From positions 36,642,001 through 36,706,000 of the forward strand of contig NC_135656.1 of NCBI RefSeq assembly GCF_964188315.1: a stretch of DNA of 64,000 nt, written 5' to 3'. A program made the position numbers and the translations under genes. Source of the stretch: Podarcis muralis. Lineage: Eukaryota. How positions within the stretch are numbered: position 1 is the first letter of the stretch; every line of letters starts with the position of its first letter. Below, one piece after another: positions 27,625 to 33,601 of this stretch. A model generated the notes under the pieces. That model had not been told where the DNA came from, ran no database searches, and saw only the letters and a list, made by a program, of their open reading frames with translations.

Positions 27625-27755
27625 CTCATACGCCTGACAATTCCTTCATGGGTTTTGTGTCTGAGGAGCTCAATGAAACAGAGAAGCAATTTATTAAATC
27701 CAACAAGGCTAACAACATGGCAGTGGTATATGGGAAAGAAGCCAGCATTTGGAAG
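27625..27755 (+). CDS. MGAT5B: MGAT5B coding exon F (131 nt, phase 1-0): HTPDNSFMGFVSEELNETEKQFIKSNKANNMAVVYGKEASIWK
   Basis: Acceptor tttctttgcag|CT and donor AAG|gtgggt; HTPDNSFMGF and AVVYGK motifs. Confidence 0.97.
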
Positions 27756-28821
27756 GTGGGTAGCAAATAAAATAGTGGAACTTTTTAACAGTGTCAAAGG
27801 CATTTAATCACCCAATCATGGTCCAAAGTGTGCTAAATACTCTGTGGCTGCAATCTTATGCAAACCTATTTAGGAATACATCTAACTGAACTCTGTGGGA
27901 CTTCTTTTGAGTAATTAGGTATGGAGTGCATCTCTTATAACATTTAACAAATGGATGAGGAACCTGTGTCTCTCCCAATGGTTTTTTTTTTTTTTTTGAC
28001 TCCATCTTCCATCAGCTCTAGCCAGTATGGCCAATGGTCAGAAATGACTCTATTGTAATGACTGTAGTTTGTTTTAATAGATTTCAGCAGCAGCAGCAAC
28101 AACAACATGATGGTGTTGCTGGTGCAAGTTGCAGTCCAATAACAGTGGATGCCACAGGTTCCTCATCCCAGACACAGCAGAGGACCATATGAAGAGTTAT
28201 AGGTTTCATCCAAATAATTCTTTAACTTTCAGGACCAGTTTAGGCCTTTGATAGGTACAGCCGGATCTTGCCTGGTTGCAAATGCAAAGGATGAGGGGCT
28301 TCTCTTTCACATAGAACTACACACACATCAACACACACACATCCTTTGTTTAAATGCCAAGTCCCACAGTGAGAGGACTAAGTGAATGTTGTCACTCTAT
28401 GTACTCTATCCATGGACCACTCTATATAAACATAAGCATTTGAAAGCTTTTATGAGCTACTTAGCCTGTTCTCTTCATTCATCTCTGCTGCATTATTCCT
28501 TGCAGCAGCAAATAGTAATGGTGGGCCCAAGAAAGCGTGAGGAAGGAACCATTGTGTTCATGTCATGCTATTTAAAAAGTGCTTTTAAGAACTTTAAAAT
28601 GCTTATCATATATGGATCTTCAACTCCCCTGTTGCCGAACCTTCCCCAGTAATCATGATGCCACCCTGAAGTTATGGGGATTGGGTGAATTCGTGGAGGA
28701 GGAGGGGACAAGCATGAGCTACTGTCTGTGACAGTTAAATGAATACCAGTGCCAGGATAGTTTGGGGTAGTTGAAAACAACCATACAGGAGGCTGAATTG
28801 CCTTTATGGCCTGCTTACACT

Positions 28822-29072
28822 GAGAGCCAGTGTGGTGTAGTGGTTAAGAGCGGTAGTCTCGTAATCTGGTGAACCGGGTTCACGTCTCCACTCCTCCACA
28901 TGCAGCTGCTGGGTGACCTTGGGCTAGTCACACTTCTCTGAAGTCTCTCAGCCCCATTCACCTCACAGAGTGTTTGTTGTGGGGGGGGGGAGGGAAAGGA
29001 GAACATTAGCCGCTTTGAGACTCCTTTGGGTAGTGATAAAGCGGGATATCAAATCCAAACTCTTCTTCTTCT
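28822..29072 (+). mobile_element. tRNA-derived SINE with MIR/CORE-like middle and L2-type tail (Squam2-like)
   Basis: Head gagagccagtgtggtgtagtggttaagag, B-box-like gggttcacgtc, core gctgggtgaccttgggctagtcac, tail gccgctttgagactcc...aaagcgggatatc and (ttc)n. Confidence 0.8.
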
Positions 29073-29282
29073 ATTTGGAAGCACTGGATTGGGCTCTGTT
29101 CAGAAATGATGCTTGGCTAAATGAGACCTTGGTACAACCCAACAGAGCTTTCCTGAAGCTCTGTTGGTTCCTGGTTGCTTCAGAGCATTTCTGAGATCTT
29201 TTTAGTTTGTTGCCATTGATGCAGAGGAACTAACTCTCATTCCTTCTTCCTTCTCTCTGTGTGCCCACCATGGGATTTCCAG

Positions 29283-29288
29283 CTGCAG
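29283..29288 (+). CDS. MGAT5B: MGAT5B 6-nt microexon (CTGCAG = Leu-Gln, phase 0-0), probably alternatively spliced
   Basis: Branch-like ACTAAC at ~29229-29234, then a pyrimidine tract at 29235-29260, TGC at 29262-29264, ttccag|CTGCAG|gtaaac. It inserts LQ between IWK and GKEK, the junction where I recall human MGAT5B isoforms differing by LQ. Confidence 0.88.
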
Positions 29289-29399
29289 GTAAACAGAAAA
29301 TCATTTTTAACTATGTGCTTTTTATGTGTATTATTTCGATTTGCATACCCGTTTGCGCTGACAAAATGGAATTTTATTTGAAGGCTACATTGCAATGTG

Positions 29400-29690: not shown

Positions 29691-30720
29691 TCCACCCCCA
29701 CCCCCCACATATGGAGCCCAGGCCCCCAAGTTCCAGTGTGTGCCTTCAGAGTAGAATACTTGAACCACAACACCTCTCATTTTTGAATCAAACCCAGGTG
29801 GTGAATGGCTTGGCTTCTTCCCTTTGCTGTTTTGTTTTGCTTGCATGTTGTTTCCTCTGCACACTTCTGTTTTCCAGGGGGAAAGCAGGTCAATTACCCC
29901 TGAGTGTAGAAGCAAATCCTGCCTAGAGAACGCTTCCTCTCCACACCCCCCCCTTCCACCCCCCTCTTGCACAGCTTTACTTGATGCAAACATTGTGCAT
30001 CTCAAGTTATGGAAATCTCTTGTGCATCAACATGTGATTGTTCATCACACAGATTTCTATCCAGCAAACTGAAATATGTGCCATCAGGAGTGCAGTGGAG
30101 GGTTTTTAAATTATCGCTTCCGCTAAGCAAGAACTCGATGCAGAAACCATAGGTTTTGTTTGAAGATGATTATAACAATATTCACCCAAACCATATTTGC
30201 CGGAACCTGTGATGCACCGTAGATGTATTACAACTTCCTTATTCACTTTAGCATGCATTTGATTTGAAAGAAAGAATTAATGTACTATAAACACAAAAGC
30301 AATATCAAGTGGATGTTCTCCAATGTGGCATCTGCTTATGCAACAGGGCTCCTCTTTTCTCTCCTCCTCTTCATACCCCCCAAAATCAGCTCCAGACAGC
30401 TGATGCGGGGCATTCAGGAAGGTGGCGGAGGGAGTAGAGAAATGCGAAGTCCCATTGCACAATATGCTTTCCATTGCAAAAGCAGGCAGACATCATATCT
30501 ATCTATCCATCTATCCAGACACACTATGCATATCTCCCATTATTTTATCAAATGCTGTCTGTAATATTCATATCCATTCTAAGAAACTCACACCTGATCT
30601 GAATATACTCCATTTTATTCCTCTAAGTATAAACCCTATTTTGTATTGCAAATGATCGCTTCAATGTGCTTATCTACCTGCCTTTAAAAAGTATACTGGG
30701 CTCAGTGATCATTTGCAATA

Positions 30721-31220
30721 CGAACCGCATGCTGACAGCTCAAAGGTCACTCGTGGTTCGAGGACCCGATCCCCGCGTAGTGAAATGAAGACACAAGGAC
30801 AAGTAATATAAGGTTAATGGGCGAGAAAAGGCCACAACTTTATTGATTACAGCAAGTGAAAAGGTATTGGCTTAGGCATTGGATCACGTGACTTGACTCC
30901 ACCCACGCAGAGAGGGATGAGTCTGCAAAGGGGGGTTTATTCACCAGTAGGTGGAGTCCGTTGATGCTAATCCAACTATAAGCTCTCCCCTGATGTCACC
31001 AAGGGTCGTGCCATGGCCCCCCGCCACATAGGCATCAGACAGGATCCACGACCTCCGGATTCCTTTAATGGAATACCCAAAAATTGAAGGCGTAGGTGAT
31101 GGCCACACCTAGCCCTTCCACACACCGCAACATATTCCAATGCCTAACCGCCACCCGAGCCCAACAGGCTCACCGCCTTGTCTCATACATCCCACAGACT
31201 CTTGTATGAGAGACCTTACA
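30721..31220 (-). mobile_element. Probable solo LTR (ERV-like), CpG-rich
   Basis: Minus strand starts TGTAAGG (31220) and carries AATAAA (plus-strand tttatt at ~30839-30844). Possible 6-bp TSD gcaata / gaaata; the left boundary is ambiguous (alternative 30786 with a 4-bp gaaa TSD). Confidence 0.5.
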
Positions 31221-32691
31221 GAAATAAGACGATTCCAAGCCCTCATGGAGTGCACTGGATGCTTCCAACTGGCCAACTCAAAATGAATTTGCTCCTTTTG
31301 TTGAATTGCACAATTTTTGTTTTGGTTGTGAGCTGGTGCACAATTTTTATTCATTATTGTTTCCATCAGTTTCTGAAAACATCCTTAGACATGACTGTGC
31401 AATCCTTTCAGTCTCTGGTGTATTGTACATGGGCCCAAGTCATGATGTGACATGCCAGAGGCCTCCCACTATACAGGGCAAGACTTGGCACAGCCCAGAT
31501 CTGCATGACAAGGCAAAGCATCTCTGTGCTTACATGAGGGGGCCTCATGCGAAGGTCCATTTTAAAGCCTGGCATTCCCATAATGGAATCTAAAACAGAA
31601 GCGTCAGCAGAATTCAGACTTGGATACTGGGCTTTATGAAAAATGTCCCCTACCCATGTGAGCCAACTCAGTCTTGTTCCCATCAAACATCTGACCGATC
31701 AACCCAGCAGTTGGTGTGTGATGTTTTGCATGTGCAGAAAGTGCTGCACACTTCTTAGTGGTTTTACGCTTCAGCCAGAATACCAAATGTGGTGGAAGAA
31801 TTGAAACAGATCTTTAAGTGTATCAGCATCCCCCAGTGGCAGCAAAAGTTGCATCACTTCTCTGAGTGCTTGAGGCAGGTGTCTGCTGCAGACAACACAG
31901 GGAGGATAAGCGAGAGCAAGGCTTGGCCATTAAAGTTCCCAGCCTTCTTTGTCTACTAAACCAGAGACCATACAGTAATTTCTGTGGCTGGGAAGAGCTT
32001 CCTCTTTAGGCTGGGCTTCAATGAAGCCCAGGTCTCGATTGCTGTTTGTACCTCTGCTCTCACCCCTAACTTTAATTTGGCTGGTTTGTGTCTTCTAATG
32101 CTGAAAAGTGTGGAGAAATTGGGGGAAGAAGGGAGAGCAGAAAGCAGTCTGTTCTGCAAAGGACAATGCTGACCACAGCTGAATTCGAAGGGGAAGTTAC
32201 TTCTCTTGTGCAGAATTTATGCTGGCAGGGAAAAGAGATCCATGCTTGGAAACATTGTGTGACATGTATTGATCTGCTAGCCTACTCATTTGATAGAGTG
32301 ATAATGAAGTCCTTACCAGCTACGTGCAATTCTTAAAAGGCAACATCAAATGAGCTTCAGAGTTAATCAACCTAATGCGGGGCTCATTCCCAAAAGGAAA
32401 CATGCTGGGAAGCTGCAAGATAACACCTAAAACATATGTGGAGAACCTTGGCCCAGTTCCATGCATGTGGGGGAGCCTGGAGGGAGAGAAGGAGCTCTCT
32501 ACAAACCATCAGTTCAGCTCTTAGGCAACATCTCCTTTTCCCAGGAAAAAGAAGTTTCCCCACCTCTGATAGGACAACTGGTACCTGCTTTTCAAAATAG
32601 CATACCACCTACATAATTTGATCAGACATAAGCTTATTCCAAAGAGCAGGACCTCCCTTTAAGAACAGGATACCTTTTGAATGCTCTAAGG

Positions 32692-32829
32692 CAGCGGTTC
32701 TCAACCTGTGGGTCCCCAGATGTTGTTGGACTACAACTCCAATCATCCCTGAGCTCTGGCCTTGCTAGCTAGGGGGGATGGGAGTTGTAGTTCAACAACA
32801 TCTGGGGACCCACAGGTTAAGAAAGGCTG
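32692..32829. mobile_element. Young palindromic hAT (Charlie-like) MITE, 138 bp, copy 1
   Basis: cagcggttctcaacctgtggg...cccacaggttaagaaaggctg; perfect 8-bp TSD ctctaagg at 32684-32691 and 32830-32837. Confidence 0.92.
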
Positions 32830-33445
32830 CTCTAAGGGCATGGTAACATAATGTACTGGCATCACATTTTTTCTAACTGCTCAAGGCACTTCATTTTAGA
32901 TTGCTACTTACAACATAGGAGCCAACTCCTAGGGGCCGAGGTCCCTTCACACACCCCCAATAAAATATTTGAGGGGCCGTCCCTCCCCCATTTTGATGGG
33001 CATTGCCATTCAAATGATGTGCATGTGCCGCGTCTTGTGATCAGTTATGTGGAGCAGGGCTTACATGCCCCCTCCATATTTTATTCAGGTTGGAACCCCT
33101 GACTTACAATAACCTGTTTAGGTAGGCCAGTATTATCTCCATATTATACAGGTGGTGGCTGAGACTGAGAGATGGAGCAGCTTGCCTAAGACACACCCAG
33201 TATGCTCATGCTTGGAGTGTGAATTTAAATCAGGCACATATCAGATACCCTAATCATTATACTAGCTGATCTCCCATTGTCTCTGCCGGGGTACATTTTT
33301 ATTTGCTTGCTTAATTGGGGAAAGGTTACCATCTGGATGAGCCATGACAAAATGTATGCAGCTGGATGTAATTTTATATGTCCTCACGAATTCTGAACTT
33401 TGTGACTGGCAATCACAGATGAATTTCTTTCCTTTCTTTTCTCAG

Positions 33446-33601
33446 GGCAAAGAGAAGTTTCTAGCCATCCTGAACAAGTACATGGAGATCCATGGCACTG
33501 TTTATTACGAAACACAGCGCCCGCCTGAAGTCCCAGCTTTTGTGAAGAATCATGGTCTCTTGCCACAACATGAGTTCCAGCAACTCCTGAGAAAAGCCAA
33601 G
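33446..33601 (+). CDS. MGAT5B: MGAT5B coding exon G (156 nt, phase 0-0): GKEKFLAILNKYMEIHGTVYYETQRPPEVPAFVKNHGLLPQHEFQQLLRKAK
   Basis: Acceptor ttttctcag|GGC and donor AAG|gtattt; the peptide matches MGAT5B. Confidence 0.97.

What the first reader, a model, noticed from the sequence alone, without database searches (positions are those of the whole stretch)
29221..29294. Hidden 6-nt Leu-Gln microexon in MGAT5B with neural-microexon hallmarks
Seen: ACTAAC branch, long pyrimidine tract, TGC about 20 nt before the acceptor, then ttccag|CTGCAG|gtaaac. It is frame-preserving and fits between ...VYGKEASIWK (exon F) and GKEKFL... (exon G). It is invisible to the ORF track and likely missed by gene predictors. 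Known: UGC near the 3' splice site is the SRRM3/4 enhancer of neural microexons. From memory, human GnT-Vb/IX has isoforms differing by LQ at this junction. Inference: the 2-aa switch dates at least to the amniote ancestor. It sits a few residues after the VYGK segment of the donor-binding lobe, so it could tune UDP-GlcNAc binding or O-mannose versus N-glycan preference.
Basis: partly seen in the sequence, partly recalled or inferred. Interest (0 to 1): 0.75.

Follow-up and report, generated by a model that had tools for sequence, protein, structure and literature searches.

The report
Known 6-base MGAT5B microexon, lizard copy
The six-base Leu-Gln mini-exon in this lizard's brain glycosyltransferase gene MGAT5B is almost certainly real and conserved from fish to mammals, but its human counterpart is already catalogued as a neuron-induced, SRRM4-responsive microexon, so this is an ordinary orthologue whose effect on the enzyme is untested.

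Summary
CTGCAG (29283-29288) lies in the 5,690-nt phase-0 intron between MGAT5B exon F (27625-27755) and exon G (33446-33601). It has an AG acceptor, a GTAAAC donor, a displaced pyrimidine tract, a TGC 21 nt upstream and a CTAAC branch site about 49 nt upstream.

A stand-alone 6-nt Leu-Gln exon with the same architecture sits in the orthologous intron of Podarcis lilfordi, a tinamou, platypus, a spiny mouse and a pipefish. The Leu codon varies synonymously (CTG, TTG, CTC, CTT). Chance would give this in five lineages with P of about 1e-7.

+LQ and -LQ protein isoforms are annotated across mammals, birds, turtles, squamates, frogs and teleosts. A tandem acceptor or donor is excluded in the window and the five comparison loci.

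The human orthologue is VastDB event HsaEX0039104 (6 nt). Published tables give PSI 36 in neural precursors and 94 in neurons, and 21 to 87 with SRRM4 versus an inactive mutant.

RNA from this species was uninformative: the four runs had no depth on exon F or the microexon and almost none on exon G.

LQ lands two residues after the short donor-site helix that GnT-V uses to bind UDP-GlcNAc, so an effect on the donor site is plausible but untested.

Verdict: real, ancient and already known. Earlier notes of this scan hold other microexons in this genome, none naming MGAT5B.

The parts
27625..27755 (+). MGAT5B exon F (131 nt), ends ...VVYGKEASIWK on a full codon; donor AAG|gtgggt
   Evidence: Pfam PF15024 positions 245-288; aligns to GnT-V H417-K460 in PDB chains
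29229..29234 (+). Candidate branch site ACTAAC (branch A about 49-50 nt before the exon); no AG between it and the acceptor
   Evidence: CTAAC, CTAAT or TTGAT sits at -41 to -50 in tinamou, pipefish, spiny mouse and platypus; inferred, not mapped
29235..29261 (+). Displaced pyrimidine tract (UCUU/CUCUCU-rich), 19/20 pyrimidines in its best window
   Evidence: the proximal -25..-4 stretch has only 13/22 pyrimidines, against 13-21 at the gene's constitutive exons
29262..29264 (+). UGC motif 21 nt upstream of the exon (candidate SRRM3/4 enhancer)
   Evidence: a TGC lies at -14 to -24 in all five lineages, joint p 0.03 to 0.006 depending on the window chosen; not informative in one species
29281..29282 (+). 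3' splice-site AG (ttccag|)
   Evidence: AG conserved in all six genomes
29283..29288 (+). 6-nt cassette microexon CTGCAG = Leu-Gln
   Evidence: orthologous 6-nt LQ exons at L001:40766-40771, L002:33776-33781, L003:52347-52352, L004:23484-23489, L005:36365-36370
29289..29294 (+). 5' splice site GTAAAC (with the exon: CAG|GTAAAC)
   Evidence: GTA invariant in the five-species alignment
33446..33601 (+). MGAT5B exon G (156 nt), starts GKEKFLAILNKYMEIHGTVY; acceptor tctcag|
   Evidence: Pfam PF15024 positions 289-340; aligns to GnT-V K462-K510

Best explanation
CTGCAG at 29283-29288 is the lizard orthologue of a vertebrate-wide alternative cassette microexon of MGAT5B (GnT-IX/GnT-Vb, a brain beta1,6-GlcNAc transferase that branches O-mannose glycans). 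When included it inserts Leu-Gln between ...ASIWK and GKEKFL... Inclusion most likely works as in the human orthologue. The exon is too short for ordinary exon definition. It has a weak proximal acceptor, with the pyrimidine tract and branch point pushed 14-50 nt upstream. It is probably recognised in neurons when SRRM4 or SRRM3 (eMIC domain) engages the UGC and U/C-rich element just upstream of the 3' splice site, and it is largely skipped elsewhere. In the protein, LQ lengthens a two-residue linker (K-G) to four (K-L-Q-G). That linker follows the short helix whose GnT-V counterpart holds the UDP phosphate (K454) and lines the GlcNAc acetamide pocket (V455, F458), and it precedes the next long helix of the donor-binding lobe. 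Shown here: the sequence, the frame, conservation as a separate exon, annotated +LQ and -LQ isoforms, and the position in the fold. Shown by others for human: a 6-nt cassette event, induced in neurons and by SRRM4. Inferred: use and regulation in this lizard, and any effect on catalysis.
For: Sequence and frame.

Separate 6-nt LQ exon with AG and GTA borders in the same intron of tinamou, pipefish, spiny mouse and platypus, with four synonymous Leu codons. It is identical in Podarcis lilfordi, inside a 102-nt perfect block that ranks 4th of 116.

Chance expectation about 1e-7.

Among the 120 listed protein clusters, 42 carry LQ and 50 carry nothing at the junction. Paired +LQ and -LQ RefSeq isoforms of one gene exist in Ahaetulla, Rhineura, Zootoca, Podarcis muralis and Eublepharis.

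No tandem site is available in the window. The -8/-7 positions of exon G are not AG, and there is no GT 6 nt after the exon F donor.

Human event HsaEX0039104, length 6: PSI 21.1 to 86.5 and 18.8 to 75.2 with wild-type SRRM4 versus the eMIC deletion mutant, six entries in S6 Data. PSI is 93.8 in day-50 neurons and 36.1 in neural precursors (PMC7935315 supplements).

Position in the fold: GnT-V K460|N461; PMC11450819: K454, V455 and F458 in a short helix at the donor site; AlphaFold2 model of the Rhineura +LQ isoform: strand 460-465, helix 468-471, L473-Q474 coil, helix 476-486.
Against: There is no RNA evidence from this species. In two raw RNA-seq runs and two contig sets, exon F and the microexon had zero depth. 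Exon G had only two 91-nt contigs in one run, and they stop short of the junction. Inclusion in this lizard is therefore inferred. The tool also drops human-like reads silently, so the zero depth may itself be an artefact.

The UGC motif is expected by chance at 35-50% of AG sites in a single species.

The proximal acceptor is weak, and the donor lacks G at +5.

The AlphaFold2 model is mediocre overall (mean pLDDT 61; 66-71 around the insert).

Neural specificity and SRRM4 dependence are shown only for human cells.
Confidence: 0.88

Rival explanations
1. The exon is real and conserved, but in lizards it is not a neuron-specific SRRM3/4 switch. It could be near-constitutive wherever MGAT5B is expressed, or controlled mainly by PTBP1, RBFOX or NOVA.
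For: MGAT5B is itself almost brain-restricted (PMC12860957), so 'neural' inclusion could simply follow expression. Human baseline PSI without active SRRM4 is already 19-36. The UGC motif is weak evidence. The upstream tract is rich in UCUU/CUCUCU, which from general knowledge are PTBP1 sites. A GCATG lies 11 nt downstream in tinamou but is not conserved in the other species.
Against: Human PSI rises by 56-65 points with wild-type SRRM4 but not with the eMIC-deleted form, and by 58 points on neuronal maturation. A TGC sits at -14 to -24 in all five lineages.
Confidence: 0.2
2. It is a chance AG-N6-GT in the intron, a pseudo-exon that this lizard does not splice.
For: Twenty-one AG-N6-GT sites occur in this intron alone. 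No reads from this species cover the junction.
Against: The same Leu-Gln exon sits in the same intron in six genomes spanning more than 400 million years, with synonymous variation. The closest relatives (Podarcis muralis, Zootoca, Lacerta) have RefSeq +LQ isoforms. It is the best candidate in the intron on both splice-site measures.
Confidence: 0.04
3. The LQ of annotated isoforms comes from a tandem acceptor at exon G, or an alternative donor at exon F, rather than from a separate exon.
For: In spiny mouse and platypus the last 6 nt of the intron before exon G also read Leu-Gln (CTGCAG, CTCCAG). Many predicted proteins carry VG, FQ or PQ, which are the translations of the exon F donor and the exon G acceptor.
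Against: None of the six genomes has AG at -8/-7 of exon G. In lizard, tinamou and pipefish those 6 nt encode SQ, PQ and HQ, so their LQ can only come from the internal exon. The human event is catalogued as a 6-nt cassette exon (EX), not an alternative acceptor. The VG, FQ and PQ forms are best read as predictor artefacts.
Confidence: 0.01

Closest known systems
Human MGAT5B 6-nt microexon, VastDB event HsaEX0039104
   Same: Same gene and same length. The primate +LQ isoforms carry the insert at the same exon junction. The human sequence itself was not examined here. The human event is induced by SRRM4 and by neuronal maturation (PMC7935315 supplements).
   Different: Different species. Regulation and tissue pattern were not measured in the lizard.
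RefSeq +LQ / -LQ isoform pairs of squamate MGAT5B (Podarcis muralis, Zootoca vivipara, Rhineura floridana, Ahaetulla prasina, Eublepharis macularius)
   Same: Identical junction peptide IWK-LQ-GKEKF (or SKEKF) with a partner isoform 2 residues shorter. The Podarcis lilfordi genome has the identical exon and flanks.
   Different: Only the proteins could be seen. The exon coordinates of those models were not available, because the genes exceed 100 kb.
SRRM4-dependent 6-nt neuronal microexons such as TAF1 exon 34' (PMC6948980)
   Same: A 6-nt, frame-preserving, deeply conserved cassette with a UGC-containing element upstream of the 3' splice site and neuron-enriched inclusion.
   Different: Unrelated gene. 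The MGAT5B exon shows appreciable inclusion without active SRRM4 in human cells (PSI 19-36), so it is less switch-like. Here it modifies a Golgi enzyme's donor-site region rather than a protein-interaction surface.
NAGNAG and other tandem splice sites that add or remove one or two residues
   Same: The outcome at protein level is a 2-residue difference at an exon junction.
   Different: The mechanism differs. Here the 6 nt lie 1.5 kb from exon F and 4.2 kb from exon G, with their own acceptor and donor.

Membership tests
Vertebrate neural microexon programme (SRRM3/4, eMIC-dependent) | Length 3-27 nt and frame-preserving | tested here: met
   6 nt, in a phase-0 intron
Vertebrate neural microexon programme (SRRM3/4, eMIC-dependent) | UGC motif next to a U/C-rich tract within a few tens of nt upstream of the 3' splice site, with the branch point displaced upstream | tested here: inconclusive
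   Present: TGC at -21, CUCUCU tract, CTAAC at -49. A TGC lies at -14 to -24 in 5 of 5 lineages. Background is 0.35-0.5 per species, and the joint p is 0.03-0.006.
Vertebrate neural microexon programme (SRRM3/4, eMIC-dependent) | High conservation of the exon across vertebrates | tested here: met
   A separate LQ exon in lizards, a bird, a monotreme, a rodent and a teleost. LQ proteins also occur in frogs, turtles and snakes.
Vertebrate neural microexon programme (SRRM3/4, eMIC-dependent) | Higher inclusion in neurons than in other cells | not testable with these tools
   The four runs laid had no depth on exon F or the microexon and almost none on exon G. For the human orthologue, published PSI is 93.8 in neurons and 36.1 in precursors.
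Vertebrate neural microexon programme (SRRM3/4, eMIC-dependent) | Inclusion depends on SRRM4 or SRRM3 with an intact eMIC domain | not testable with these tools
   Published for the human orthologue only: wild type versus eMIC deletion, delta-PSI 56-65.
MGAT5B / GnT-IX (CAZy GT18, Pfam PF15024) | Sequence membership of the host gene | tested here: met
   Exons F and G hit PF15024 at E 4e-14 and 4e-17, above the curated cut-off. Twelve exons map to squamate MGAT5B at 86-94% identity. Identity to GnT-V (MGAT5) PDB chains is much lower.
Tandem (NAGNAG-like) splice site | A second AG or GT within a few nt of the constitutive site that yields the extra residues | tested here: not met
   There is no AG at -8/-7 of exon G and no GT 6 nt after the exon F donor, in the window or in the five other genomes.

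The most novel reading that the evidence does not exclude
The Leu-Gln microexon may be a neuron-specific tuning switch of the GnT-IX active site, kept for more than 400 million years. By lengthening the linker right after the helix that holds the UDP-GlcNAc phosphate and acetamide, it could change donor affinity, turnover, or the balance between O-mannose and N-glycan acceptors. None of the glycobiology papers opened here mentions the two isoforms, and no paper in the library names MGAT5B together with 'microexon', so enzymology done on one isoform may not describe the form that mature neurons make.
Probability: 0.3. Interest if true: 0.55.

Novelty: already known. Interest (0 to 1): 0.25.

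Why it matters
For genome annotation, this is a clean example of a 6-nt exon that ORF-based and homology-forced predictors either miss (Podarcis lilfordi, Pogona, Anolis models) or fake. Many bird, crocodile and Elgaria models carry VG, the translated donor. Others carry FQ or PQ, the translated acceptor. For biology, the exon itself is not new. What is open is its meaning: a neuron-induced, deeply conserved two-residue insert sits next to the donor-binding helix of the brain enzyme that branches O-mannose glycans, an enzyme implicated in remyelination and node-of-Ranvier integrity. No paper in the searchable library discusses whether the two isoforms differ enzymatically.

Tried and rejected
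(1) RNA evidence in this species. The single read-laying run (X14 and X15 raw RNA-seq; X1 and X2 contig sets) gave zero depth on exon F and the microexon. Exon G had only two 91-nt contigs in X2. All other depth fell on intronic repeats. The test is uninformative, not negative, because the gene is unexpressed in these libraries or its conserved exon reads were filtered as human-like.

(2) Genomic DNA for closer or key taxa. The genes of Ahaetulla, Gopherus, Astyanax, Zootoca and Sphaerodactylus span more than 100 kb, so no DNA was returned.

(3) Literature. No paper holds both 'MGAT5B' and 'microexon' in its main text. Irimia et al. 2014 is not held. The supplements of Li et al. 2015 and of the zebrafish microexon study have no MGAT5B entry, and those of Quesnel-Vallieres 2015 are not held. 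The glycobiology papers opened do not mention the isoforms.

(4) Rfam found nothing in the intron.

(5) UGC as stand-alone evidence was rejected after the background test.

(6) Conserved RBFOX GCAUG sites were rejected, because only tinamou has one nearby.

(7) The tandem-site origin of LQ was rejected.

Exons were searched one by one by reference, and database proteins (Rhineura +LQ isoform P0314 and relatives) stood in for the spliced product.

(9) No human contig was fetched or compared. The 158 N in the window were left alone.

Full report
**1. What is in the sequence**

The window carries, on its + strand, twelve exons of MGAT5B, covering residues of about 171-795. They map at 86-94% identity to squamate MGAT5B proteins.
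- Exon F is 27625-27755. It ends ...VVYGKEASIWK on a complete codon, with donor AAG|gtgggt.
- Exon G is 33446-33601. It begins GKEKFLAILNKYMEIHGTVY after the acceptor tctcag.
- The two exons hit adjoining positions 245-288 and 289-340 of Pfam PF15024 (GT18). Anything between them is therefore an insertion relative to the family profile.

- ACTAAC at 29229-29234
- a long pyrimidine tract
- TGC at 29262-29264
- ttccag ending at 29282
- CTGCAG at 29283-29288
- GTAAAC at 29289-29294

**2. Is it more than chance?**

Inside this window alone the signal is only weak. The intron has 21 AG-N6-GT sites and about 175 such sites for lengths 3-27 in steps of three. This candidate is the best 6-mer on a rough donor matrix of my own (3.3 bits). 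That score is within the range of the gene's constitutive donors (-1.4 to 7.0) and in the top 2% of all GT in the window. It also has the best upstream pyrimidine run, 19 of 20. Its proximal acceptor is weak, with 13 of 22 pyrimidines at -25..-4, because the tract is displaced upstream.

**3. Comparative evidence**

*Proteins.* A search with exon G found MGAT5B proteins and many genomic ORF fragments. A word search around the junction returned 557 proteins. Among the 120 listed clusters, 42 carry IWK-LQ-GKEKF and 50 carry IWK-GKEKF.
- LQ forms come from mammals including platypus and marsupials, birds, turtles, snakes and lizards, frogs and many teleosts.
- A Logan-assembled protein that clusters with salamander MGAT5B carries LE.
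- Pairs of RefSeq isoforms differing by exactly these two residues exist in Ahaetulla, Rhineura, Zootoca, Podarcis muralis and Eublepharis.

*Genomic DNA.* It could be fetched for five species. Each has exactly one AG|Leu-Gln|GT hexamer in the orthologous intron:

| Species | Hexamer | Locus coordinates |
|---|---|---|
| Tinamou | TTGCAG | L001:40766-40771 |
| Pipefish | CTTCAG | L002:33776-33781 |
| Spiny mouse | CTCCAG | L003:52347-52352 |
| Platypus | CTGCAG | L004:23484-23489 |
| Podarcis lilfordi | CTGCAG | L005:36365-36370 |

- Across the six genomes the hexamer lies 297-1,573 nt after exon F and 1.0-4.3 kb before exon G.
- The Leu codon takes four synonymous forms while the peptide stays LQ. 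That argues for selection on the protein as well as on the splice signals.
- The pattern has a background of about 0.014 per kb in the 497 kb examined. The chance of one in each of five independent introns is about 1e-7.

*The close relative.* The Podarcis lilfordi intron is 93-96% identical to the window, which marks the window as a lacertid. The microexon lies in a 102-nt perfect block (29225-29326), ranked 4th of 116. Adjacent to it is a 147-nt perfect block. This is suggestive of local constraint but not decisive at such a short distance.

*Snakes.* The 813-residue snake isoforms translate the pyrimidine/UGC region itself, as ...SSCFSLCANMDFQ-LQ. This matches the lizard's upstream stretch and shows that the element is conserved across squamates.

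**4.

A tandem acceptor at exon G fails.
- None of the six genomes has AG at -8/-7 of exon G.
- In lizard, tinamou and pipefish the last six intron bases would encode SQ, PQ and HQ, so LQ must come from the internal exon.
- There is no GT six bases after the exon F donor.

The odd VG, FQ, PQ, VS and LSQ junctions in some predicted proteins equal the translated donor (GTGGGT gives VG) or acceptor (..CAG gives xQ). They are best read as predictors forcing two residues into a model that lacks the microexon.

The Podarcis lilfordi annotation simply omits the exon although the genome has it. So 'missed by predictors' is partly right, but RefSeq has it in many squamates.

**5. What is already known**

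The supplements of Head et al. 2021 (PMC7935315) list MGAT5B event HsaEX0039104, length 6, as a VastDB cassette exon.
- PSI is 21.1 with an eMIC-deleted SRRM4 and 86.5 with wild-type SRRM4. It is 18.8 versus 75.2 in another sheet. The table of exons induced in six cancer cell lines holds six entries for this event.
- In their re-analysis of a human neuronal differentiation series, PSI is 93.8 in day-50 neurons and 36.1 in neural precursors.

The orthologous human exon is therefore catalogued, neuron-induced and SRRM4-responsive. No paper in the library names MGAT5B together with 'microexon' in its main text, and the glycobiology papers I opened do not mention the isoforms.

**6. Cis-elements**
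- All five lineages have a TGC 14-24 nt upstream of the exon.
- All have a CTAAC, CTAAT or TTGAT branch-like site 41-50 nt upstream.
- All have a pyrimidine tract between the two.

In one species a TGC in such a window is expected at 35-50% of AG sites. For five of five lineages the joint probability is 0.03 for a -40..-8 window and 0.006 for -30..-10. The motif is thus compatible with SRRM3/4 control but adds little by itself. The case for that mechanism rests on the human experiment.

**7. RNA in this species**

- Depth was zero on exon F and on the microexon.
- Exon G had only two 91-nt contigs in one run, and they do not reach the junction.
- All other depth lay on intronic repeats.

Either the gene is not expressed in these libraries or its conserved exon reads were removed by the tool's human-likeness filter. 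Inclusion in this lizard is therefore inferred, not shown.

**8. Where LQ falls in the enzyme**

Exon F aligns to GnT-V (MGAT5) up to ...VYGKVDSFWK, and exon G from the second residue after it. The numbering comes from my recollection of the human sequence. I checked it against residues named in two papers (P400/W401, E520, E526, I552/K554, K454, V455, F458). On that numbering the junction is K460|N461.

Cioce et al. 2024 (PMC11450819) state that V455 and F458 adjoin the GlcNAc acetamide. They also state that both belong to a short helix that recruits UDP-GlcNAc through K454 and a UDP phosphate. LQ is therefore inserted two residues after the F458 equivalent and six after the phosphate-binding lysine.

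An AlphaFold2 model of the Rhineura +LQ isoform has mean pLDDT 61, and 66-71 around the insert. It shows strand 460-465 (AVVYGK), helix 468-471, coil K472-L473-Q474-G475, then helix 476-486. Whether the longer linker changes donor binding or acceptor choice is untested.

**9. Verdict**

The age is underestimated: the exon goes back at least to bony vertebrates. It is the lizard orthologue of a known, catalogued neuronal microexon, so novelty is low. The only open and mildly interesting question is enzymological: do the +LQ and -LQ forms of GnT-IX differ?

**10. Limits observed**

No human contig was fetched. N stretches were untouched.

Noticed in passing
window 29227-29288; proteins P0275, P0276, P0277, P0281, P0285: Snake MGAT5B isoforms of 813 residues (plus the partial 684-residue Crotalus model P0277) carry a 20-residue insert, EVNL(A/T)SSCFSLCANMDFQ-LQ. 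It is the microexon extended 54 nt upstream through its own pyrimidine/UGC tract, that is, an upstream alternative acceptor giving a 60-nt exon. In the lizard the homologous stretch is 62 nt and out of frame, so this longer form is not available here. Whether the snake form is real or a prediction artefact is unknown.
   Followed up: partly
window 27625-27755 (exon F): The human table that lists the 6-nt event also lists a 131-nt MGAT5B exon (HsaEX0039109) as SRRM4-responsive, PSI 53 to 90. Exon F of the lizard is also 131 nt, so it may be the orthologue. Skipping a 131-nt exon would shift the frame.
   Followed up: no
window 28815-29214, 30615-31214, 32615-33214: Interspersed repeats in the intron draw very high RNA and contig depth, with many mismatches and loose ends (copies elsewhere in the genome). 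The first ends about 210 nt upstream of the microexon. At 32691-32830 there is a MITE-like palindrome with 60-nt arms, 88% complementary.
   Followed up: partly
proteins P0175, P0178, P0183, P0191, P0210 and others: Many annotated MGAT5B proteins of birds, crocodile, snapping turtle and Elgaria read IWK-VG-GKEKF. VG is the translation of the exon F donor GTGGGT. FQ, PQ, MQ and VQ forms equal the translated acceptor of exon G. These look like systematic annotation artefacts caused by the missed microexon. The cluster represented by P0210 alone has 462 members.
   Followed up: partly
L005:36365-36370 (Podarcis lilfordi) versus protein P0286: The Podarcis lilfordi genome has the identical microexon and flanks, but its deposited annotation lacks LQ. 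Podarcis muralis RefSeq has both isoforms.
   Followed up: yes
protein P0231 (Logan assembly, salamander cluster) and P0051: Two proteins carry Leu-Glu instead of Leu-Gln at the junction (IWK-LE-GKDNF and MWQ-LE-GKDRF). This implies a microexon ending GAG rather than CAG in those lineages. The annotated salamander proteins in the same cluster lack the insert.
   Followed up: no
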